Positions 1,675 to 13,119 of a stretch of DNA of 64,000 bases are shown one piece after another. The notes beneath the pieces are model-generated. The model was not told the origin of the DNA, ran no database searches, and saw only the letters and a list, made by a program, of their open reading frames with translations. How positions within the stretch are numbered: the stretch's first letter is position 1; the number at the start of each line of letters is the position of its first letter. The stretch spans positions 21,576,001 to 21,640,000 of the forward strand of contig OZ320321.1 in assembly GCA_976226885.1 (NCBI GenBank), written 5' to 3'. The stretch comes from Iphione sp. A-MEVVRFRX5. Lineage: Eukaryota. A program made the translations under genes and the position numbers.

Positions 1675-1711
1675 TTGAATTGAATTGAATTGAATTGAAT
1701 AAACCTTTATT
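1675..1711 (-). repeat. LINE 3' tail: AATAAA followed by (ATTCA)5
   Basis: The plus strand shows TTGAA x5 at 1675-1699 and TTTATT at 1706-1711. Short tandem-repeat tails are typical of CR1/L2 elements. Confidence 0.8.
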
Positions 1712-2764: not shown

Positions 2765-5554
2765 CTACTCCACTCCCCAGTCAGCTTCAGCCTTGCATTT
2801 GAGCCACCCCTTTATTCGTGGTTTTGTTGATTCCCTTACGCTCCGCGGTAGAGAGTTCCAAGCAGATACGGCGCCGTAACGTAGGCTCATAATGAACTTC
2901 TGTGACTTGGCCCTGGGGACGCTCACTCTCATTGCCTCTCCTTCACGAGTTCTGGACTTCGAAGCCAGTGGGAGAATCCGCAGATGTGCTAGTCGGTGTA
3001 TCGCAGTAATGGCCCTGATCTCCACAATGGTTGCGACCCGATCAATCGCATACTTTGTTGCTAGGAATTTGGCTGATGTATACTTGTGGCTTTGGATCCC
3101 AACCCTGATGCACCTGTTTAGGTGAATCTGCAGATTTCTTTTGTCGGCTTTTGTGCAGCCGTACAGTAGCGCAGCTCCGTAGTTTAGATGGGTAAGGACC
3201 AATGCCTTGAATAGTCGCGCTCGTACAGCTTGGGTGAGCAGGTGTTTTACTCGGCCCAGCTTTATAGAGGCCGACCACATTTTCGCTTTGATGTCCTTGA
3301 TCTGCTCCTTAAAACGAAGCTTAGAATCTACCGTGTACCCTAGAAGTTTAGCCTTGTCTGATAGGTCCAGTTTGGTTTCATTAATAGTGAGGTCTAAGGG
3401 GGTACCCGCGGCTTTGCCAAGTACCTGGTAGCTACATTTCCCTTCACTGAGTTTGAGTCCCGTTCTATCACACCAGGTTGATATCGTATCAATGGTGTTC
3501 TGGGATGCAGCTCGTAGTCGAAGGAGATCGGGTGCCGCAACAATGACCGTGAGGTCATCAGCATAGAGTGTAGCCTCGCTATAGTCGGGTAGATGTCCGA
3601 TGACGTCATCAATTACAAGCGCAAAGGCGCTAGGGCCAAACACGGAGCCCTGGGGAACCCCATGTTCGACCTTCCTAAGGTGAGAGTCCGTTCCTTTGCA
3701 TCTGACATACTGCATACGATCCTCGAAATAGCTTGCCACCAGTTTGCGTATAGAGGCGTTCGCACCAGCCAATGATAGTCGATGTAATACCATATCACGT
3801 GGAACCAGGTCGAACGCCTTCTTCAAGTCGAAGGCCAGAAGGCTACAGTACCTCCCCGCGTTGAGTAACTCCTGTGCCCGCATTACCAGACTTACAATCG
3901 CAGTCTCAGTACTTCTTCCGGCCCTAAACCCATGTTGTTCAGGGCTGATGAACTTGGCATTCTCCATTTTTTGCATCAACTTGGCGACAAACCAGGATTC
4001 AAAGATCTTGCCCGGTAGTGGCAGGATTGAAACCGGGCGGTAGTTCGATAGTAGTTGTCGATCGCCCTTTTTGAAGATGGGGGTAACCCGGGCGATCTTC
4101 CAGGCTGCCGGGTAGTGACCGGTATCAATTATCCTCCCGTACAGTGCCGATAAGAAATCTAAAAGTAGCAGCATCAGTGGTTTTAGGATTCTAGTTGGAA
4201 TACCCCTGACGCCAGAAGCCTTTGTAGTGCGTTGCTTCAGGACAACTGGTCTCAAAGCTGCCGGACTTGGCGCAGTCAATGCAAATGTTCGTCGCCCTCC
4301 ATGAGTCATCCAGTTCTCAGAAGCTGGTGCTTTTGCTAACTTTGCAACTTCATCCACGAAGTGGTCGTTGAAACTGTCCGCGAGTGACATCTTGCCGTCA
4401 TCATCTACCTCTCCCTCTTCACTCGGCAGCGTCGGTTCGCCTCCTTTGCGGCCAAGTACTGTATTAAACACTCCCCATAACTTAGCCGAATCGTTTCCAG
4501 CACGTCTGACTTCCTCCATCCAGTGCCTATGGTGATTGTCTTTGATAGCCCTTCTCACTTTCCTATCAATGAACTTGTAGATTCTCTTTGAGTCTTCGCA
4601 GCCGTTTACTTTCCATTTGTTGAAGAAGTAGCGACGGTCAGCTATCATCTCGAGCGTCTCCGCATCTAGGTCAGGTCCATTTGTCGTTCTCCTAATGGTA
4701 CGCCATTTTTCCGGACACAATCTGTCCAGTTGTCGTCTGATGTCGTCCTCCAATTCGACCCATGCCCGGTTCGTATCATCTACAATATCCGGTAGGCCAC
4801 CATCACGAAGTGCCTGGTGCAGCTCGTCCAGAATGTTGGAGTCCCATTTTCTGGTCTTGATCTTGATAGCCTTGACCTTCGGGGCTCCTTTCTTGAATTG
4901 CAGAAGGACCGGCAAATGGTCACTCAGGAACTCCTGTTGGGCTGCAACATGGTGGTTGCCTTTGAGGTTCACCCATACATGGTCCAGGCAGTGTTCACTG
5001 TCTACCATCGTTGGGAATGATACTAGCTGAGTCAGACCAAAGCCACTAAAAAGGTCTGTTAAGCTCTGCCCTACCCTCCCTTTCGCCAGGTAATTATAAT
5101 TCATATCCCCTGCAATTATGATGTCGCAGCGACGAAGTTTCCGCAATTTCAGAAGCATATACTCCAGAGCCTTCGATGAATCCGCTAACTTGTCATGTGG
5201 AGGTCTATATACTGCCGTCAGAACAATCGGCCTGCGCTTCCCTGCTTTTATCTTAATGCACAATATCTCACAAAGACTACCCTCCATACTGCAATTCTCC
5301 ACGCTAAGGATATTAAACCCATCCCTTATGTAGACCAGTAAACCACCCCCCCTCCTGCCAAGCGTGGCACACCTATCCTGCCTAACACATTGGAATCCCG
5401 TCATACTGACCTCCCCGTCACTGTGGCTCGAATTTAGCCATGTCTCAGTTAAGACGACGATGTCAACTCTCAGGGACGAGACTACATCTCTAAGTTCAAA
5501 TATCTTTTTTCGTAAGCTACGCATGTTATAAAGAAGTAGCTTCAGAGCCCCCAT
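2765..5554 (-). CDS. LINE ORF2: apurinic-like endonuclease plus reverse transcriptase, 929 aa, no stops or frameshifts
   Basis: APE motifs YNMRSL, DIVVLTETWL, GGGLLVY, VYRPP, IIAGDMN, CLDHVW, SDH. RT motifs YRPVSILP, QHGFRAGRSTETA, FDLKKAFD, GVPQGS, YADD, LLGYTVD. CR1/L2-type C-terminal WNSLP. ATG at 5554. Confidence 0.97.
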   Translation of the reverse strand: MGALKLLLYNMRSLRKKIFELRDVVSSLRVDIVVLTETWLNSSHSDGEVSMTGFQCVRQDRCATLGRRGGGLLVYIRDGFNILSVENCSMEGSLCEILCIKIKAGKRRPIVLTAVYRPPHDKLADSSKALEYMLLKLRKLRRCDIIIAGDMNYNYLAKGRVGQSLTDLFSGFGLTQLVSFPTMVDSEHCLDHVWVNLKGNHHVAAQQEFLSDHLPVLLQFKKGAPKVKAIKIKTRKWDSNILDELHQALRDGGLPDIVDDTNRAWVELEDDIRRQLDRLCPEKWRTIRRTTNGPDLDAETLEMIADRRYFFNKWKVNGCEDSKRIYKFIDRKVRRAIKDNHHRHWMEEVRRAGNDSAKLWGVFNTVLGRKGGEPTLPSEEGEVDDDGKMSLADSFNDHFVDEVAKLAKAPASENWMTHGGRRTFALTAPSPAALRPVVLKQRTTKASGVRGIPTRILKPLMLLLLDFLSALYGRIIDTGHYPAAWKIARVTPIFKKGDRQLLSNYRPVSILPLPGKIFESWFVAKLMQKMENAKFISPEQHGFRAGRSTETAIVSLVMRAQELLNAGRYCSLLAFDLKKAFDLVPRDMVLHRLSLAGANASIRKLVASYFEDRMQYVRCKGTDSHLRKVEHGVPQGSVFGPSAFALVIDDVIGHLPDYSEATLYADDLTVIVAAPDLLRLRAASQNTIDTISTWCDRTGLKLSEGKCSYQVLGKAAGTPLDLTINETKLDLSDKAKLLGYTVDSKLRFKEQIKDIKAKMWSASIKLGRVKHLLTQAVRARLFKALVLTHLNYGAALLYGCTKADKRNLQIHLNRCIRVGIQSHKYTSAKFLATKYAIDRVATIVEIRAITAIHRLAHLRILPLASKSRTREGEAMRVSVPRAKSQKFIMSLRYGAVSAWNSLPRSVRESTKPRIKGWLKCKAEADWGVE

Positions 5555-6261: not shown

Positions 6262-6999
6262 TCATGCACAGTGTCCATGCTGGTTAGCCTGGCCAGTTTG
6301 GTAAAGACCAGACCTTACCTTGGCGGCAAATGAGATCAAGAAAGCTGTTATCCTTGTCGCCCACGCAGTCGAAACGCTTTCATGAACATGGATTCCACAG
6401 TCAAGCAAAAATTCACCCTGTACTGTGACTGAGCGACCTGCATACTTGTTCACTGGTAAGTCCAGCCGGGGTGGCCACAGATTGATAGGTATGGCATGCA
6501 TATCGCAGAAGATGTTATGTGTAGATACTAGTGCATTCACCACCATCTCCATCTCTGGATCGATGCAGTCCGGCTCGATCCTACCTACGTGGAGACCCGC
6601 GATTGGGCAGCATAGTAGGTATGGACCAGTCCCCATCGGGCCCCGAGCCCAGGCGCTCAGTTTGTTGACGTAGTACTTAAGCGACTCCAGATAGGCACTC
6701 GGTCCACTGTACCTTGGTGACCACTGCCCGAACTCACACTTGATAATTTCTTTGTGGCCTAGCGCTATAACCACCAGATCATAAATGGTTACATCCACAA
6801 ATAGACGACGTTTCCATATACGTTTGTATGTACCCTTCTCAATGTTGAGCACATGAATCATCATAGTTGGTAGATTGCTGTAATTTAACTTCTCCACCGC
6901 TTTCACAACACGGCTGTCCACTATCAGTAGTACTCGGATAACGCGCTCATTGGGATCTGCACCTCCTGACGCGATTGACCATTCTAGGACACAAAGCAA
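6262..6999 (-). CDS. SGNH/GDSL hydrolase (esterase)-like protein, 245 codons, middle ORF of the LINE
   Basis: Block I-like VLLIVDSR (Ser29), block III-like YDLVVIALG, block V-like LDCGIH followed by an AWATRI helix, in the order and spacing expected for SGNH domains. The ORF-track start is TTG. The first in-frame ATG (codon 46) lies after the putative catalytic Ser. Confidence 0.7.
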   Translation of the reverse strand: MLCVLEWSIASGGADPNERVIRVLLIVDSRVVKAVEKLNYSNLPTMMIHVLNIEKGTYKRIWKRRLFVDVTIYDLVVIALGHKEIIKCEFGQWSPRYSGPSAYLESLKYYVNKLSAWARGPMGTGPYLLCCPIAGLHVGRIEPDCIDPEMEMVVNALVSTHNIFCDMHAIPINLWPPRLDLPVNKYAGRSVTVQGEFLLDCGIHVHESVSTAWATRITAFLISFAAKVRSGLYQTGQANQHGHCA

Positions 7000-7340: not shown

Positions 7341-8513
7341 CTACGTAGAATCACGTATTTTCATTAGCACCCTTCCTAACATGTTACTCCCGCTGTGTGT
7401 AACCGGTTCCGACCAGTCACCCGATATAGCCTTCCCTGAGCCTAAAGTCGCATCTCTGTCAGCATAGATTAACTCTTTCGGAGAAGTTTCTTTTAACATA
7501 GACAAGCATTCTGGCGAGTACCGGAATTTAGCACGATAAATTGATTCAAGTGTTACCTCTGCACTCTGATCCCATTCTGTGTTTGTTGCAATTTTACTAC
7601 CCACTCGTCTTGCCTCTACACCGTATCTTGCCTTCTCAATGGCCTTGACACTGACACCATCCTCACAAATACGCGACTTGCAACACTGATACGCCATTTC
7701 AACCGAATCGTAAACAATACCCTCGTAAACCATCGGCAGATATTCCATAGGGTTTAGTGCCGGTGTGTCATTGGCAAAAATTAATTTTTCGCCTCGGTCC
7801 AACGTGGAGTTGAGAGCCGGATTAATGTCGTCCGGCAGGAAATCCTCCTCGGATGGTCCGTAGTGGACTCCGTCAACAACCACATCGATCCCTTTGACAA
7901 TCGCGCGTTTTCCCTTGCCTTTGGCGATGGCCGCGATCCTTGCTTGCCTCCTATGTTGGTCAGCTGATCTTGTAGGGATGTCCTCGCGGAGAAACACATT
8001 CCTGTATCGTGGCATTCCTCCCATCTTCGACCGGTTTCTCAGTAGAGTATTCCTCAAGTACTCAGAGTGCATGGCTACTCCAATCCTGTGTTTGTTGGCC
8101 GCATCCCCAAGCCGGAATACTTCCATCACGCTGTCACGTCTTAGACCCGCGACCTCCCAGATCATTCGCAGAACAAACTGCCAGGGATCCTCAGTAGCTT
8201 GTGAACTGACTCCCTCTAGAATCACAATGTGTGATCTGGAGGCAATTTCCATTCTGGATAAATCCTCGTCGAGACGGGTGCTCTTTATTTCAACGCTAGA
8301 CAACCGTGCATCGATAGCGTCAACCTTCGCTGTCAGGCCTCGCTGCAGTGTGGGCTCCGCCGATAATGCTTCCAATGTCTCCTTTAGAGCAGTATTCTCG
8401 GCGCGCAGATTAGCCACAGTAGCTTTTAGGCCGGCAATTTCTTGTTCCGTAGACATTTTCAGCTCTTCAACCAGTCTCAGGATCGCCGCTGTCCCCGTCA
8501 GCTTACCTGGCAC
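7341..8513 (-). CDS. LINE ORF1: coiled coil + L1/Tnp22-like RRM-CTD + C-terminal NADAR (YbiA-like) domain
   Basis: Heptad-rich aa 11-92. RSHIVILEGV, FRLG and NVFLREDIP resemble L1-type ORF1p RRM/CTD. aa 244-388 carry the NADAR motif series (SVEMAYQCCK, EARRVG, WDQ, RAKF, LKETSPKELI, DATLGSG, GSNMLGRVLMKIR). The ORF-track start is GTG 8513; the first ATG is 8456. Confidence 0.92.
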   Translation of the reverse strand: MPGKLTGTAAILRLVEELKMSTEQEIAGLKATVANLRAENTALKETLEALSAEPTLQRGLTAKVDAIDARLSSVEIKSTRLDEDLSRMEIASRSHIVILEGVSSQATEDPWQFVLRMIWEVAGLRRDSVMEVFRLGDAANKHRIGVAMHSEYLRNTLLRNRSKMGGMPRYRNVFLREDIPTRSADQHRRQARIAAIAKGKGKRAIVKGIDVVVDGVHYGPSEEDFLPDDINPALNSTLDRGEKLIFANDTPALNPMEYLPMVYEGIVYDSVEMAYQCCKSRICEDGVSVKAIEKARYGVEARRVGSKIATNTEWDQSAEVTLESIYRAKFRYSPECLSMLKETSPKELIYADRDATLGSGKAISGDWSEPVTHSGSNMLGRVLMKIRDST

Positions 8514-8537
8514 ATTGTCCCAATTTTAAGCAATCTG

Positions 8538-8677: not shown

Positions 8678-8704
8678 TAACCGGAAACAGATTATTTTTA
8701 GGCC
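8678..8704. mobile_element. Solo terminal-inverted-repeat remnant related to the 38775-39110 MITE
   Basis: TAACCGGAAACAGATTATTTTTAGGCC resembles the right TIR GTTACCGGAAACACAGAACTTTTTTTTAGGCC. Confidence 0.4.
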
Positions 8705-10739
8705 TACCACCGGAAAAACGTTATACTTTAGGTCTGACCATTCTATATTTTTGGTTGTATATAATCTTGCCTTCTCTCTAGTCTCTACTGTATAAACATA
8801 TCATATTAATATAGATCCTTCAACAAAAACTACCTATCCACCGATTACTGCGTCCCAGATGACATTGTAGGATGCCCAGAACAGTCACATTGGGCCAGGA
8901 TACTGCTCTCTCCATATCCAATCATATTGTAATATGTCTAAGTCTAGCAGAGTGCTGGCAGGTAGAAGGGTCAAACAGATGACAAAATGAAGAATCAGTT
9001 CACTCCAATAGCATGGAAAATAGTTGTGCATAGGGTGATCATTCTCGTAGGTGCAAAGAGGAAGATGCTTACTTGTATACTACATGGTTACATTATGGTT
9101 GCTAAAAATAGATGTACTATCTAGACATATGTCTGGACTGGAGGAAAAGGCATAATCATTATATAACTTATGGTAAAGTTAGCTACCAACTTCTGTTGCA
9201 CCATAGACATACGTGTCGTAGTTACCTTATTGCACAAAACCTATCTATGTAGTACGATCCAAGTCAAAACTGAAACAGACCCTCTGATGCAGATTGCTGG
9301 ATCATTTCCGGACAGATCCCTCAGTGAATGGATGGACCCACGACAATAGGTTATAGGATATAGAGTCTGATAATGAAGCCTCTTGTGGACCGAAAGTCCT
9401 TAACCATTGATAGAACTATAACAATGACCATAGGGAGATGAAAGAAGTATACTGTGGTGGAGGACCCTTAAGACAATACAGTCATTTATGTAATGAATCA
9501 CTGTTTTATTCTCTAACCTAGGTTACAGAGCAGGAATTCTGTATTGTACGATATATATTTATTTGCATCCATGTTGTTCATTATGCAGAGTCCTAATGAA
9601 CGCTGGCTCTAGTAGTCATAACCCAGTATCGAGCAACATCTCATTCTTGAAACTGTGCACTTTATAAAACTTGGAAGGTACCTCTGTATTAGAGATCATA
9701 AAAGGCAATGGTACAGTGTACTAGATGTCAGTACACATCAGCAGTTTCTAGTGGTGTGCGGGGAAGTGTTTTCGAGAGCGTCACTAATTCAATCGGTGAT
9801 TTTATGCCTACATTAATCAACACACCTAAGAACTGGAGCAGGCTGAGAAGGACACAAGGAAAACTACGCACAAATATAAAAGAGTCATTATTATGCATAG
9901 ACAGATCTAGTCTTGCTTAGACTCTCCTTACAGCACCGCAACCATCAAGCAATTCGCAGTCCAAGCCATCTGCCAGCCTAGGTAAATACAATAACACAGT
10001 TACATCCGCTCACACACCGACATTACGAAGCCCAATAGTTAAGAGAACCGATTAGGAATAGATACCAAGAGTTCAGTCAGCGTCTCCATCAACTTACTCA
10101 TGTGCAAACGCTGTCCTGGTCGTCTACGCTGAAACAAAACCCTACACATTAGCATACGTAGTGAACACATTCACTAAAACACATTTACGCTCACGGCCCA
10201 ACGCACAGAGAGATACACATGGATATCTCGCCCCCTCCCCCCCAAAAAAACATTTTTTAAATAACACGAAAAAAATTAGAATTCCATGATCAAACAAACA
10301 GACGAACTTAGACATCCCGACTCACAGACACACACACACACTCACTAACAAGTACCCATTATGTCCTCTCAGTGTACCTCATTACCACTAGAGTAACGCG
10401 AGACGAGACTTGTCATAGCCAATCAGAGCGCAGCATGCTGTATACGGTCTGCCGGGAACGGTCCCGCGGAAAAAGAGATGCATTCTGGGAGGACTATACT
10501 GCATCTCATTGCCAGGTTGCTAGCAGATCTGGAAAAGGCGGATCCGTAAATCACAGTATATTTGACTCGCGAGTCGTAATCAAATCTGCGGCTGCGGTCG
10601 CAATTCGAGACGATTTATCCAGAGCTAACGTTCTCAGAAGGTTTATGCATATTTTTGCAATATCATGTCTAAATCCAGACAGGCTGATACTGAACTCAAC
10701 CAGTGGACACTGATATGTACACCTAGCAGTTTATTATTT

Positions 10740-11460
10740 TCTCCATTTCTTCTGTCTGCTATGACGCAATTATATTACTTCCCTTTTGAATTTCTTTATG
10801 TGAGGATATGTCTTTATTGTCGATAGAAACCCTTTCCATAATTGCAGTCCGTAATACTGAAACAAAATCTTCGATCTTTTCATATGGGGCCTTGCGATCC
10901 CTTAGACAAGCGACAGTGATCTCGTTTTGGCCTCTGGCTTTTTTGAATAGATGCTCCACTGAAATAATTTATTAATTGCGTTGGCACTAGACATTCACTT
11001 AATGAGTCAGTGTATCCAAGGATAGAATTTTGTTTAATTCCTTTCGTGGAAAGTCTCTTCATTAACAATGTTTTCAAGGAGGCTTTAAATATACTCTGTA
11101 ACTTTTCTTTACTGCTCCCCTTATCATGTGAGCTAGTTGGTATTCAAATATCAGACGTACGAAAGCCTTGTATAACCAGATCATATCCTTGCACGAAGTA
11201 TTTTTAGAGATACGAAATGTGCCCTTATGTAAACATGTTTTCTCGCTTCCTGGATCCTTGCGATGTATATTTTTGTGCTATCGATAAGATATTCCAAGAA
11301 CTTGCACTTCTGCCCCAGTTCTATTGATTTATTGTTTAGGGTTACGTCAATAGCAGATACCTCTATCCTTTCCCCGAATATAATGCAGACTGTTTTCTTC
11401 TCGTATATCAGCAGTCAATTCTGCTCTGTCCAGGTAGAGATATCCCTCAGATGCCTTTGA
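10740..11460 (-). mobile_element. Decayed LINE ORF2 3' part
   Basis: KTVCIIFGERIEVSAIDVTLNNKSIELGQKCKFLEYLID and IWLYKAFVRLIFEY match post-YADD RT/thumb motifs; stops and frameshifts are present. Confidence 0.7.
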
Positions 11461-13119
11461 AGCTTTAGACGCAGGTTCTACCACCATAGGGGTGTTTAAT
11501 TGCATAGTAATGATTGCTCTTCCTAGGAATTAACATATGGACCAACACTCAGATACGAATCATAAGACAATGTGGCATTGGTTTCGCAAAAATTAAAATG
11601 ATTGCAACCTGACAACTCGACTCGAAAGTTTGGGAGGGTAATAGGATCAACATACAGAAACAACTCATAATCCCTATCTAAATATGGACCAAATAGTAAG
11701 AAATGATCTCTGAGGTTGTAATAGATACATTTTCTAAATCGAATGAGTATCTTTATGTTTTATGTCAACAAAGGAGTAAGAATGGCACATAATCTGAAAA
11801 TCACCTCTCACACCAACGATATTGTGGGTGTTTTTTTTCAACCAATCAAATTCTTCATATGTTAAGTAAATAACAATGATGGTGACTATCAATATATATA
11901 GCGTTTGTGTCTGAAGACAAGCAAGATGCAGTGCATATCAGTAATATCTCCATGTATTTCATCCATTTCACTATCATGGTCAGAACAGGGTTTAAGTGTG
12001 GATTCTTTAATGTTTGTCTGATAGTTCCAATGCATCGCCCGAGACTGCAGGTCGCGGGTGAAAGGGCATGAAGAATCCTTACCTAAACCATTAGACCGGC
12101 AATCAATTCGGTGCTGGACTATAGATCCATCCCATTGTTACCTTCACCAATACCTGTTTAGACGCATCATTACTATAACCCTCTATCTCAACTGAACAAA
12201 GGTTTCCGTCCTTCTTAATAGACGCAGCGACAGGTTTGTACAGAGATTAATAAAATGATAAAGTTTTCCCCACCCGTTCACTTATTTTTCAACACTTGGT
12301 TCACAGCAGGTCTGGGCTTATTAATATTTTTTTCTCAAAGCTATGTGAAATTGCCCTAGCCAGTTCTCGGAAACACCCTGGGTCTGATTACAGGCATCTC
12401 GTAATGCAGCATAATACATCTCTTCTCATGTTTCAGGCATTGTATGGGATTCTGTACACTCGGCGTAAACAGATCCCTTGGTTTATTTGTTACTTCGTTC
12501 GCCTCCCGTATTATATCATACAAATGTTCTTGGTTAATAGCGGGATGCCTGCGAGGGTTACATTTGAGCCAATCAGCGCAAATCATCTTCTTCTATGTAT
12601 TAATTATGTACATGTATATGATCTGTTCAACTACTAGATTAAAGATTTTCATGAAGTCCAAAACAACTCATACCTCAGCCAAAGAATGCCCAATTCCCTC
12701 AAAGTGATGTCACATATGCCCATATGTGAAACAACAATGGACTACTTACATACCTGCTCGCTCAATAATTATTTCATGACTACATCATACCTTTATGCAG
12801 GTATCACTGTCCAGCTGACCATATTGCCAGCGAGATTTTCATCCTTTTGCATCGTGGCTCTATCACGTTCTTGTGAGTCATTAAATATAATGCACATGGG
12901 AGCTCAATAAATTATTCCTCTTAAATGGTATTTATCCTGGCAATCCAATGGTGCCAGCGCATTCTACCAGAATAATGATTGTGGTTGATCCTATTTACGT
13001 AGTCCTTAAATTCTAAAAGGGATGTACATATATACATGTATACAGGGGAGATTGATGAAAAATATTTACTTCAAGCACAAAATAATATATGTATGTAATT
13101 TCATGTGCAGTTTGACTAC

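What the first reader, a model, noticed from the sequence alone, without database searches (positions are those of the whole stretch)
7341..8513. LINE ORF1 protein fused to a NADAR (ADP-ribose/N-glycosidase) domain
Seen: aa 244-388 (nt about 7350-7784) of ORF1 follow the YbiA/NADAR motif series without gaps: SVEMAYQCCK vs SEHYFQAQK; W..... RAKF vs W.... RAKF; D..LGSG vs D..WGDG; GSNMLGRVLMKIR vs GKNRLGYLLMELR. The conserved Glu (E272), Trp (W314) and Asp (D354) are retained; the Trp of DxxWG is Leu here. The domain is fused in frame behind a standard coiled-coil/RRM/CTD ORF1p. Established: NADARs are N-glycosidases. Some remove ADP-ribose from guanine in DNA (antitoxins of DarT1), and YbiA acts on riboflavin intermediates. 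Known accessory ORF1 domains in CR1/L2 elements include PHD, esterase and CCHC knuckles; I do not recall NADAR being described there. Inference: the retrotransposon RNP carries its own eraser of nucleic-acid ADP-ribosylation, a possible counter-defence against host ADP-ribosyltransferases or a way to clean cDNA/target DNA during integration.
Basis: partly seen in the sequence, partly recalled or inferred. Interest (0 to 1): 0.9.

Follow-up and report, generated by a model that had tools for sequence, protein, structure and literature searches.

The report
LINE ORF1 protein carrying NADAR domain
A CR1-like LINE retrotransposon in this window does encode an RNA-binding ORF1 protein fused to a NADAR (ADP-ribose N-glycosidase) domain; it belongs to a large, barely described family of such fusions, but this copy has lost the family's key catalytic glutamate.

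Summary
Observation confirmed. The minus-strand ORF 8513..7341 is an L1-type ORF1p (coiled coil, RRM, CTD) with a C-terminal NADAR domain. Pfam gives 62 bits against a cut-off of 35. The AlphaFold model has pLDDT 91.5. It matches Phytophthora NADAR with ADP-ribose (TM 0.70) and L1 ORF1p (TM 0.6-0.66).

The ORF lies in an intact-looking three-ORF CR1-like LINE: ORF1-NADAR, a 245-aa GDSL-esterase-like ORF, and an APE-RT ORF2.

The fusion is not a one-off. Of the 150 best NADAR relatives in a 1.8-billion-protein library, 92 carry the same ORF1 N-terminus. Five of the seven relatives' loci fetched have RT-bearing ORFs downstream. In that family the active-site residues are almost invariant (Glu in 89 of 92).

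This copy is therefore a non-canonical, possibly inactive variant.

It is not wholly new. One 2025 paper notes in a sentence that ORF1 of oyster Tx1 LINEs carries YbiA-type NADAR domains.

The proposed role, erasing ADP-ribose from nucleic-acid bases on the LINE RNP, is an inference and untested. No close copies were found, so dN/dS could not be computed.

The parts
7341..8513 (-). ORF1: 390 codons from GTG, first ATG at 8456, stop at 7341-7343. L1-type ORF1p fused to NADAR.
8235..8495 (-). Coiled-coil region of ORF1p (aa ~7-93).
   Evidence: AF2 helices 7-52 and 54-93. Coiled-coil-type weak Pfam hits. Family profile positions 60-226 align to the L1 ORF1p trimer.
7839..8228 (-). RRM (aa ~96-178) plus CTD (aa ~181-225) of ORF1p.
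   Evidence: Profile match to L1 ORF1p 2ykp/2yko E=1.3e-15, 2ldy E=1.8e-9 and 2w7a E=6.6e-6. Foldseek matches to the L1 ORF1p trimer and to RRM domains.
7344..7808 (-). NADAR domain (aa ~236-390).
   Evidence: Pfam PF08719 62.1 bits. Leave-one-out family HMM 118.6 bits. Foldseek 8bau TM 0.70, 2b3w TM 0.68. Viral NADARs in BFVD.
7464..7466 (-). Codon TAT = Y350, at the position of the YbiA-family catalytic Glu (E125 of 8bau). It is two nucleotide changes away from GAA/GAG.
   Evidence: The E125 mapping comes from the 8bau alignment and from PMC11543638.
6262..6999 (-). Middle ORF, 245 codons, with no ATG ahead of its Asp-Ser motif. Probable diverged GDSL/SGNH-esterase-like ORF.
   Evidence: Same position and size as the middle ORFs of L002, L005 and L008. 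L008 has a weak Pfam Lipase_GDSL hit; L002 hits Lipase_GDSL_2 at E=0.0024. A profile of those three aligns colinearly at 14.5 bits, E=3.6e-4 among the window's 295 ORFs, and only with HMMER filters off. Pairwise BLASTP E=0.04. No Pfam hit of its own.
2765..5554 (-). ORF2, 929 aa: AP-endonuclease (aa 9-216, nt ~4907-5530) plus reverse transcriptase (aa 495-742, nt ~3329-4072). The ORF is uninterrupted and YADD is present.
   Evidence: Pfam Exo_endo_phos, Exo_endo_phos_2 and RVT_1 with full-length profile coverage. Best database relatives are full-length CR1-type proteins at about 27% identity.

Best explanation
The locus is a single, intact-looking CR1-like non-LTR retrotransposon on the minus strand (about 8.5 kb to 2.7 kb) with three ORFs.

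ITS ORF1 PROTEIN
ORF1p is an L1-type nucleic-acid chaperone (trimerising coiled coil, RRM, CTD). Its C-terminus is fused to a YbiA-family NADAR domain.

THE FAMILY
This architecture defines a large, old family of LINE ORF1-NADAR proteins. Across that family the NADAR active site is kept almost invariant.

MOST LIKELY MECHANISM FOR THE FAMILY (inferred)
The fusion tethers an N-glycosidase to the LINE ribonucleoprotein. The enzyme removes ADP-ribose, or a closely related ribosyl adduct, from bases of the element's RNA, its cDNA or the target DNA. That would protect retrotransposition from host nucleic-acid ADP-ribosyltransferases.

THE WINDOW'S COPY
It is the most divergent member seen and has a non-canonical active site: Tyr for the catalytic Glu, Asn-Pro for Ser-Asn, Leu for the aromatic residue of DxxWG. 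It is predicted to be impaired in the canonical chemistry, or to have shifted to binding or another specificity.

SHOWN VERSUS INFERRED
Shown: domain identities, the fusion, the LINE context, the family's breadth, the residue states.
Inferred: substrate, biological role, and loss of activity in this copy.

CONFIDENCE
The figure given (0.45) is for the whole statement including the inferred mechanism. For the structural identification alone (a real ORF1p-NADAR fusion in a LINE, member of a large family) my confidence is about 0.95.
For: Domain identity.

LINE context: ORF2 with APE+RT is uninterrupted. Its nearest named relatives are bird CR1-type proteins, full length, E=3e-109. Its RT is no closer to L1 ORF2p (33 bits) than to R2 (50 bits).

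Family breadth:
- There are 654 NADAR hits at E<=1e-3.
- 92 of the best 150 cluster representatives (clustered at 50% identity) carry the homologous ORF1 N-terminus; 78 of them align over at least 60 positions.
- L001, L005, L007 and L008 show an APE-RT ORF2 downstream of ORF1-NADAR. L004 shows an APE-like ORF and an RVT_1 ORF there.

Constraint on catalysis in the family: at 19-24% pairwise identity, E272, K329, G375, G380 and R387 are invariant. Among 92 ORF1-linked domains, Glu350 is present in 89, Ser254 in 90, Asn255 in 88, and an aromatic at 357 in all 92.

Residue roles: in 8bau, E43 and E125 bind the distal ribose, while K50, W89, D130 and W133 bind the pyrophosphate. Mutating the E125 equivalent or K50 abolishes guanine de-ADP-ribosylation (PMC11543638).

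Plausible host enzymes: YbiA-type NADARs reverse G- and C-ADP-ribosylation of DNA and RNA. CARP-1-type guanine-specific DNA ADP-ribosyltransferases occur mainly in bivalves, and also in Cnidaria and Porifera (PMC12945103). The only previously noted ORF1-NADAR LINEs are from an oyster.

Window copy: Y350, N254, P255 and L357 are each aligned without gaps by an HMM that excludes the window. The codons TAT, CCT and TTA each need two changes from the family state.
Against: - No biochemical or genetic test exists for any LINE NADAR.
- The family lacks two ADP-ribose contacts of 8bau. Y84 falls in a 2-residue deletion, and R79 is not conserved (alignment). The substrate may therefore not be ADP-ribose itself.
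- The position of E125 varies between NADAR subfamilies: Asp in BC4488, His in phage NADARs (PMC11543638). Tyr occurs there in 4 of 57 non-ORF1 NADARs. So Tyr need not mean inactivity.
- The window's NADAR is not more decayed than the rest of its ORF1. Leave-one-out scores rank 46/47 for NADAR against 47/47 for the N-terminus.
- The host organism is unknown, so the presence of a matching ADP-ribosyltransferase cannot be checked.
- No close copies were found, so selection within this LINE family is untested.
Confidence: 0.45

Rival explanations
1. The window's NADAR is fully active despite Tyr350. Either Tyr, or the nearby Asp352 two residues on along the same strand, takes over the role of the Glu. 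This would resemble DarT1-linked NADARs, which use an Asp two residues away from the sequence-aligned Glu.
For: The acid at this position differs between subfamilies (E, D, H), and in E. coli C7 NADAR the functional D171 lies two residues from the aligned E173 (PMC11543638). The window has Asp at 352 where the family has Thr/Ser/Asn. Tyr recurs at the Glu column in 4 of 57 non-ORF1 NADARs. The rest of the pocket is kept: E272, K279, W314, K329, D354, G375, N377, G380, R387. All ORFs of the element are open.
Against: Besides the Glu, three other near-invariant positions are changed (S254N, N255P, W357L). W133 of 8bau contacts the pyrophosphate. The other two ORF1-linked aligned members lacking the Glu, P0145 and P0161, have no acid at +2. 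No experiment exists on a Tyr variant.
Confidence: 0.2
2. The family's NADAR does not act on ADP-ribosylated bases of nucleic acids. It acts on soluble ADP-ribose derivatives, such as by-products of RNA 2'-phosphate or cyclic-phosphate end processing or NAD-derived signals, and serves RNA processing or repair of the LINE transcript or evasion of NAD-based signalling.
For: Comparative genomics links NADAR to RNA-repair systems and to soluble ADPr derivatives in viruses (PMC9503650). The authors who noted the oyster and Ectocarpus cases proposed RNA-intermediate processing (PMC12477816). The family lacks the Y84 and R79 contacts of 8bau, which is compatible with a different ligand.
Against: Every NADAR activity demonstrated on ADPr substrates so far is removal from G or C bases of DNA/RNA or nucleosides (PMC11543638, PMC12945103). 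Fusion to a nucleic-acid-binding chaperone places the enzyme on nucleic acid, not in solution.
Confidence: 0.2
3. In this copy, the NADAR domain and the esterase-like ORF are decaying passengers of a dead or dying element and have no function.
For: Catalytic-site changes in NADAR. The middle ORF has no ATG before its Asp-Ser motif. Its block III GxND reads GHKE and its block V has an extra residue. Only one copy is in the window. No close relative is in any database searched. The window ORF1 is the most divergent of 47.
Against: All three ORFs are open over 390, 245 and 929 codons, which is very unlikely after enough neutral drift to produce several two-nucleotide codon replacements. The NADAR still scores 118.6 bits against the family and folds with pLDDT above 90. 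It is relatively better conserved than the ORF1 N-terminus. ORF2 motifs are intact.
Confidence: 0.15
4. The domain is a metabolic YbiA-like enzyme acting on riboflavin-pathway intermediates, captured by chance from a host gene.
For: TIGR02464 (riboflavin intermediates N-glycosidase) is the best NCBIfam hit at 53 bits. The fold matches YbiA.
Against: The TIGR02464 score is below its 73.7-bit cut-off. A chance capture would not be kept across at least 92 diverged LINE ORF1 clusters with an invariant active site. A metabolic damage-control role makes no sense on a retrotransposon RNP (inference).
Confidence: 0.03

Closest known systems
ORF1 proteins of Crassostrea gigas 'Tx1' LINE families with YbiA-family NADAR domains (Repbase; noted in PMC12477816, 2025)
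   Same: A LINE ORF1 protein carrying a YbiA-type NADAR domain. The function is unknown and has been proposed to concern the RNA intermediate.
   Different: Those elements are classed as Tx1 (L1 group). The window's ORF2 is CR1-like by its best relatives and is no closer to L1 ORF2p than to R2. I could not obtain the Repbase sequences to compare directly. The window copy has Tyr at the catalytic Glu. The paper gives one sentence and a supplementary alignment, with no family survey.
Ectocarpus Gypsy LTR retrotransposons with NADAR at the N-terminus of Pol (PMC12477816)
   Same: A retrotransposon-borne YbiA-family NADAR domain.
   Different: It is in an LTR element, fused to Pol rather than to a Gag/ORF1-like protein. 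Its nearest relatives are bacterial, which suggests a separate acquisition.
Phytophthora nicotianae NADAR (PDB 8bau) and E. coli YbiA (PDB 2b3w)
   Same: Same fold (TM 0.70 and 0.68). The same motif series is present: SxExxxQxxK, W, AKF, DxxWG-like, GxNxLGxxLMxxR. The family profile hits them at 1e-33 and 1e-29.
   Different: They are free-standing enzymes. The window copy lacks the E125 equivalent (Tyr) and the W133 equivalent (Leu). The whole ORF1 family lacks Y84 and a conserved R79.
DarG1 (BC4488-family NADAR antitoxin of DarT1) and phage orphan NADAR anti-DarTG1 proteins
   Same: The functional analogy proposed here: a mobile element or virus carries a NADAR to undo base ADP-ribosylation imposed as defence (PMC11543638, PMC11825919).
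   Different: Different NADAR subfamily (Asp or His at the catalytic position, an N-terminal DNA-binding extension). They are prokaryotic, and no ADP-ribosyltransferase partner is known here. NCBIfam DS32_2 and the PADLOC model PDC-M42C hit only weakly.
NADAR and macro domains inside replicase polyproteins of invertebrate (+)RNA viruses (nido-like, hepe-like, picorna-like; PMC9503650)
   Same: A NADAR embedded in the replication machinery of a genetic parasite of invertebrates. Foldseek finds these viral domains.
   Different: These are RNA viruses, not retrotransposons. The domain is part of a polyprotein rather than an RNA chaperone.
Accessory enzymatic ORF1 domains of CR1/L2 LINEs, e.g. the esterase of zebrafish ZfL2-1 ORF1p (from my own knowledge; not checked here)
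   Same: The precedent that CR1/L2-type LINEs add a hydrolase to the ORF1 module. The window element and L002, L005 and L008 carry a GDSL-esterase-like ORF next to ORF1-NADAR.
   Different: Here the esterase-like part is a separate ORF between ORF1 and ORF2, and it is diverged in the window copy. The NADAR is an additional, different enzyme.

Membership tests
NADAR superfamily, YbiA family (Pfam PF08719) | Profile match above the curated threshold | tested here: met
   62.1 bits against a gathering score of 35.1, E=9.7e-17, aa 261-388. TIGR02464 scores 53 bits, below its equivalog cut-off of 73.7.
NADAR superfamily, YbiA family (Pfam PF08719) | NADAR alpha+beta fold | tested here: met
   AF2 model pLDDT 91.5. 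Foldseek 8bau TM 0.70, 2b3w TM 0.68, probability 1.00.
NADAR superfamily, YbiA family (Pfam PF08719) | SxExxxQxxK motif (E43 and K50 of 8bau) | tested here: met
   E272 and K279 are present; their columns are 46/46 E and 42/46 K.
NADAR superfamily, YbiA family (Pfam PF08719) | Family-defining catalytic Glu (E125 of 8bau) | tested here: not met
   Tyr350, aligned without gaps by an HMM built without the window. Glu is present in 89/92 ORF1-linked relatives. For its role see PMC11543638.
NADAR superfamily, YbiA family (Pfam PF08719) | DxxWG motif (D130 and W133 of 8bau) | tested here: inconclusive
   D354 and G358 are kept. W is replaced by L357, while 92/92 ORF1-linked relatives have W, F or Y.
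NADAR superfamily, YbiA family (Pfam PF08719) | N-terminal F..LSNF motif | tested here: not met
   F246 is kept, but Ser254 is Asn and Asn255 is Pro. Relatives have S in 90/92 and N in 88/92.
NADAR superfamily, YbiA family (Pfam PF08719) | C-terminal GxNxLGxxLMxxR motif | tested here: met
   G375, N377, G380, L383 and R387 are all present.
NADAR superfamily, YbiA family (Pfam PF08719) | N-glycosidase activity | not testable with these tools
   Needs biochemistry.
L1-type (type II) LINE ORF1p: coiled coil + RRM + CTD | N-terminal coiled coil | tested here: met
   AF2 helices 7-52 and 54-93. The profile aligns to the coiled-coil part of the 2ykp trimer.
L1-type (type II) LINE ORF1p: coiled coil + RRM + CTD | RRM and CTD homologous to L1 ORF1p | tested here: met
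   Family profile against 2ykp/2yko E=1.3e-15, 2ldy E=1.8e-9, 2w7a E=6.6e-6. Foldseek TM 0.60-0.66. The window sequence alone has no Pfam hit for this part.
L1-type (type II) LINE ORF1p: coiled coil + RRM + CTD | Trimerisation, RNA binding and chaperone activity | not testable with these tools
   Not tested.
CR1-like (CR1/L2 group) non-LTR retrotransposon | ORF2 with N-terminal AP-endonuclease and RT, about 900-1000 aa | tested here: met
   929 aa; Exo_endo_phos and RVT_1 with full profile coverage.
CR1-like (CR1/L2 group) non-LTR retrotransposon | RT groups with CR1/L2 references rather than L1/Tx1 | tested here: inconclusive
   The best named relatives are bird (Mycteria) and Branchiostoma PHD-linked proteins, colinear over the full length at about 27% identity. 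The RT is no closer to L1 ORF2p than to R2. No labelled Repbase references were available for a tree.
CR1-like (CR1/L2 group) non-LTR retrotransposon | 3' end with a short microsatellite tail rather than poly(A) | tested here: inconclusive
   There is no poly(A) after ORF2. A (TTGAA)5 array lies at 1675-1700, about 1.07 kb beyond the stop. Without other copies the element's end cannot be fixed.
DarG1 / BC4488-type NADAR antitoxin | Asp at the catalytic position, N-terminal DNA-binding extension, adjacent DarT1 | tested here: not met
   Tyr at that position. The upstream part is an ORF1p, not the beta1-beta2-alpha1 extension. No ART gene is in the element.

The most novel reading that the evidence does not exclude
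[quoted passage not shown] A large radiation of invertebrate LINEs answers it by tethering a NADAR eraser to their ORF1p chaperone. The window's lineage, with Tyr at the catalytic Glu, would then be a derived pseudo-enzyme that binds the mark, or an altered-specificity enzyme, rather than a canonical eraser.
Probability: 0.2. Interest if true: 0.85.

Novelty: new member of a known kind. Interest (0 to 1): 0.55.

Why it matters
LINE ORF1 proteins are usually regarded as plain RNA chaperones. A widespread family that adds a conserved N-glycosidase for ADP-ribosylated bases would point to nucleic-acid ADP-ribosylation as a force acting on eukaryotic retrotransposons. So far that modification is known mainly from bacterial toxin-antitoxin and phage conflicts.

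The family identified here gives a concrete, testable set of enzymes: at least 92 sequence clusters, of which five of the seven sampled loci have a downstream RT-bearing ORF. It also contains natural active-site variants, such as the window copy, that can serve as built-in controls.

The recurrent three-ORF layout (ORF1-NADAR, esterase-like ORF, ORF2) adds to the picture of modular accessory enzymes in CR1-like LINEs.

Tried and rejected
- The search for homologous proteins with the whole ORF1 and with the family alignment returned nothing useful. I suspect coiled-coil words filled the candidate list, but did not test this. These blanks say nothing about relatives, and the exhaustive HMMER search did find them.
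- Single-sequence AlphaFold gave pLDDT 45 and was discarded. The alignment-based model was used instead.
- Search for close copies, to allow dN/dS and to test whether Y350 is fixed: none in the window. None in metagenome contigs with ORF1. Only a 30%-identical RT fragment with ORF2. The nearest ORF2 in the protein collection is 27% identical. dN/dS was therefore not computed.
- A FastTree of 150 NADAR domains was too poorly resolved to say whether ORF1-linked NADARs have one origin: 66 of 147 branches were unsupported, and many 'other' rows are truncated ORF1 fragments. Its only usable output is that the window's terminal branch is 1.22 against a median of 0.6.
- The idea that the NADAR part specifically decayed in this lineage was rejected. 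Leave-one-out scores show the N-terminal ORF1 part is at least as divergent.
- Middle ORF: no Pfam or NCBIfam hit, no PDB hit with a three-sequence profile, and no hit from the relatives' profile under default HMMER filters. It was detected only with the filters off. The esterase reading is therefore tentative. The 216-aa ORF after ORF1 in L004 turned out to look like the start of an APE domain by its sequence, not an esterase.
- Rfam found nothing in the window.
- The sample accessions ERZ25767047, SRR29001134 and SRR30503351 appear in no paper, and cluster look-ups gave almost no organism names. The hosts of the window and of the relatives remain unknown.
- The window contains no N runs, and no contig was taken to be human. 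Human L1 ORF1p/ORF2p appeared only as PDB entries in structure searches.
Full report
WHAT IS THERE

On the minus strand the window carries one retrotransposon with three open reading frames.
- ORF1 runs 8513..7341. It has 390 codons counted from a GTG, and its first ATG is at 8456.
- A middle ORF runs 6999..6262 (245 codons).
- ORF2 runs 5554..2765 (929 aa).

ORF2 has a full AP-endonuclease and a full RVT_1 reverse transcriptase. There is only one copy in the window. The window has no N runs.

CHECK OF THE OBSERVATION

The statistics are strong.
- Pfam NADAR PF08719 matches aa 261-388 at E=9.7e-17, 62.1 bits against a cut-off of 35.1.
- A family HMM built without the window scores the domain at 118.6 bits.
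- Single-sequence folding failed (pLDDT 45). With a 47-sequence alignment (A1) AlphaFold2 gave pLDDT 91.5.
- Foldseek ranked P. nicotianae NADAR with ADP-ribose (8bau, TM 0.70) and E. coli YbiA (2b3w, TM 0.68) first. All chains of the human L1 ORF1p trimer followed at TM 0.60-0.66, then generic RRMs.
- The family profile also hits L1 ORF1p by sequence (2ykp/2yko E=1.3e-15, 2ldy E=1.8e-9) over profile positions 60-226, and 8bau and YbiA at 1e-33 and 1e-29.

The description 'coiled-coil/RRM/CTD ORF1p fused in frame to NADAR' is therefore correct.

THE ELEMENT

The nearest ORF2 relatives in a 5.8-billion-protein collection are only about 27% identical but colinear over 96-99% of the length. The named ones are bird (Mycteria) proteins and a Branchiostoma protein linked to a PHD finger. 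Both are typical of CR1-type LINEs; that statement rests on established knowledge, and no labelled reference tree was possible. Against solved structures, the RT is no closer to L1 ORF2p (33 bits) than to R2 (50 bits). That argues against an L1/Tx1-group RT. I call the element CR1-like, with that caveat.

THE FUSION IS A FAMILY, NOT AN ACCIDENT

An exhaustive HMMER search of 1.84 billion cluster representatives with the NADAR part alone (aa 221-390) gave 654 hits at E<=1e-3. Among the best 150, direct phmmer with the window's N-terminal 230 residues detects 29 at i-E<1e-3. An iterated profile detects 92, of which 78 align over at least 60 positions. These matches always lie upstream of the NADAR.

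Seven of these proteins were traced to contigs.
- L001, L005, L007 and L008 have an APE-RT ORF2 of 948-967 aa downstream. L004 has an APE-like ORF and an RVT_1 ORF there.
- L002 and L003 are contigs too short to reach ORF2.

The ORF2s of L001 and L005 are about 25% identical to the window's and 32% identical to each other. The element with one of the most similar ORF2s (P0005, L006) has a different ORF1, of Baculo_FP type. ORF1 modules therefore appear to be exchanged among CR1-like LINEs.

Almost all relatives come from unnamed Logan or ENA assemblies, and all the long ENA contigs are from one sample. The only named NADAR relative is a 4,240-aa Haliotis rufescens protein that is not an ORF1.

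ACTIVE SITE

Residue roles come from PMC11543638, mapped through the 8bau alignment.
- E43 and E125 hold the distal ribose.
- K50, W89, R93, D130 and W133 hold the pyrophosphate.
- Mutating the E125 equivalent (D171 of E. coli C7 NADAR) or K50 (K95) abolishes guanine de-ADP-ribosylation.

In the 47-sequence alignment, at only 19-24% identity, E272, K329, G375, G380 and R387 are invariant. Among 92 ORF1-linked domains the catalytic Glu is present in 89, Ser254 in 90, Asn255 in 88 and an aromatic at 357 in all 92. That pattern is strong evidence that catalysis is under selection in the family.

The window copy keeps E272 (=E43), K279 (=K50), W314 (=W89), D354 (=D130) and the C-terminal GxNxLG...R motif. 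It departs elsewhere: Tyr350 at the catalytic Glu, Asn254-Pro255 for Ser-Asn, Leu357 for the aromatic, and His373 for a mostly-Trp position. The alignment there has no gaps, even with an HMM that excludes the window.

The codons are TAT, AAC, CCT and TTA. TAT, CCT and TTA are each two nucleotide changes from the family state. Meanwhile the element's 1,564 codons contain no stop. These are therefore more likely lineage features than post-insertion decay. That is an inference, because no close copy exists to test it.

The window's ORF1 is the most divergent member overall. Its N-terminal part ranks 47/47 and its NADAR 46/47 in leave-one-out scores, so the NADAR is not selectively degraded.

Tyr need not mean dead. 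The position is Asp in BC4488 NADARs and His in phage NADARs, and Tyr occurs in 4 of 57 non-ORF1 NADARs. The window also has Asp352 two residues further along the same strand, where relatives have Thr/Ser/Asn. That recalls the D171/E173 arrangement of DarG1.

Two other ORF1-linked members of the alignment lack the Glu, P0145 (Tyr) and P0161 (Cys), and they also deviate elsewhere.

THE MIDDLE ORF

L002, L005 and L008 each carry a 205-234-aa ORF between ORF1-NADAR and ORF2, with SGNH-like blocks (TDSRG, GxND, DGxH).
- L008's has a weak Pfam Lipase_GDSL hit on record.
- L002's hits Lipase_GDSL_2 at E=0.0024, below the threshold.
- A profile of the three aligns colinearly with the window's middle ORF (residues 23-218). 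The score is only 14.5 bits, E=3.6e-4 among the window's 295 ORFs, and only with HMMER filters off. Pairwise BLASTP gives E=0.04.

The window version has no ATG before the Asp-Ser motif. It reads GHKE for GxND and has an extra residue in block V. It is probably a diverged esterase-like ORF, and this is tentative.

HOW IT PROBABLY WORKS (inference)

ORF1p coats the LINE RNA in cis, so a C-terminal NADAR would sit on the RNP.
- NADARs, including YbiA-type ones, remove ADP-ribose from guanine N2 and from cytosine in ssDNA, RNA and nucleosides (PMC11543638; PMC12945103).
- Eukaryotic guanine-specific DNA ADP-ribosyltransferases of the CARP-1 branch are concentrated in bivalves and also occur in Cnidaria and Porifera.
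- The previously noted LINE NADARs are from an oyster.
- NADAR or macro domains sit in the replicases of invertebrate RNA viruses (PMC9503650; Foldseek).

The most economical reading is an RNP-tethered eraser that keeps template RNA, cDNA or target DNA free of ADP-ribosyl adducts. For the window copy I rate impaired or altered catalysis as more likely than normal catalysis.

Rivals are an alternative active site, a soluble-ADPr or RNA-end-processing role, plain decay, and a metabolic YbiA role. They are weighed in their own sections.

NOVELTY

Literature searches found one relevant paper. PMC12477816 (Genome Biology 2025) reports NADAR at the N-terminus of Pol in an Ectocarpus Gypsy lineage. 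It adds one sentence saying that ORF1 proteins of several C. gigas Tx1 LINE families in Repbase also appear to carry YbiA-family NADAR domains.

The kind is thus already noted, but it is neither surveyed nor characterised.

New here:
- the size of the family;
- its L1-type ORF1p N-terminus, shown by profile and by fold;
- its association with CR1-like ORF2s and with an esterase-like third ORF;
- the near-invariance of the active site;
- the non-canonical site of this copy.

LIMITS
- The host organism is unknown.
- No copies of the same LINE family were found, so there is no dN/dS.
- There was no labelled RT phylogeny.
- Element termini are not defined.
- All functional statements are inferences.

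Noticed in passing
window 6262-6999 (-): A 245-codon ORF lies between ORF1 and ORF2. It is a probable diverged GDSL/SGNH-esterase-like ORF, syntenic with the middle ORFs of L002, L005 and L008. It has no ATG before its Asp-Ser motif, and its blocks III and V are altered.
   Followed up: partly
window 1675-1700: A (TTGAA)5 microsatellite lies about 1.07 kb beyond the ORF2 stop on the element's strand. It could be the CR1/L2-style 3' tail of the element, or it could be unrelated.
   Followed up: no
window 8680-8740: A 29-bp unit is repeated twice, about 170-230 nt upstream of ORF1. It may belong to the element's 5' UTR or promoter.
   Followed up: no
window 7894-8529 (+): A 211-codon antisense ORF overlaps the 5' half of ORF1. 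No evidence was sought. It is likely a by-product of the codon composition of ORF1.
   Followed up: no
window 11187-11474 (-): A short RT-like fragment, 28% identical to aa 680-770 of the element's ORF2. It is a remnant of a different LINE.
   Followed up: no
window 40000-44700: A G+C-rich stretch (up to 53%) with strong positive GC skew. It contains a (GTG)95 trinucleotide array at 42334-42627 inside a 242-codon ORF (42125-42853, -) and a (CT)27 array at 44572-44625. The ORFs have no Pfam hit.
   Followed up: partly
window 49036-49645: A 310-bp unit in two tandem copies at 92% identity.
   Followed up: no
L006 142-1014: The LINE with one of the most similar ORF2s (P0005, 27% identity) has an ORF1 with a Baculo_FP_2nd domain instead of an ORF1p-NADAR. 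This suggests ORF1 modules are swapped among CR1-like LINEs.
   Followed up: partly
L004 2925-7315: Upstream of one ORF1-NADAR LINE there is a second, truncated NADAR ORF (117 aa), a DUF8422 ORF and an HTH_animal ORF. These are probably nested or neighbouring mobile elements.
   Followed up: no
P0121 (Diplonema papillatum KAJ9455389.1, 3420 aa): The top hit of the NADAR search matched through 14 repeated stretches that correspond only to the N-terminal segment of the domain (query aa 21-54). It is a repeat protein built from a NADAR fragment.
   Followed up: no
P0189 (Haliotis rufescens LOC124129589, 4240 aa): A very large abalone protein with an internal NADAR domain at residues 549-696. It was the only named animal relative retrieved, and it is not an ORF1.
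   Followed up: no
L005 8001-10739, L008 7001-9454 and L007 7001-9223: Some ORF1-NADAR proteins are 740-912 aa long. They have a 250-300-aa extension ahead of the ORF1p core and extra sequence after the NADAR. The extensions have no Pfam hit.
   Followed up: no
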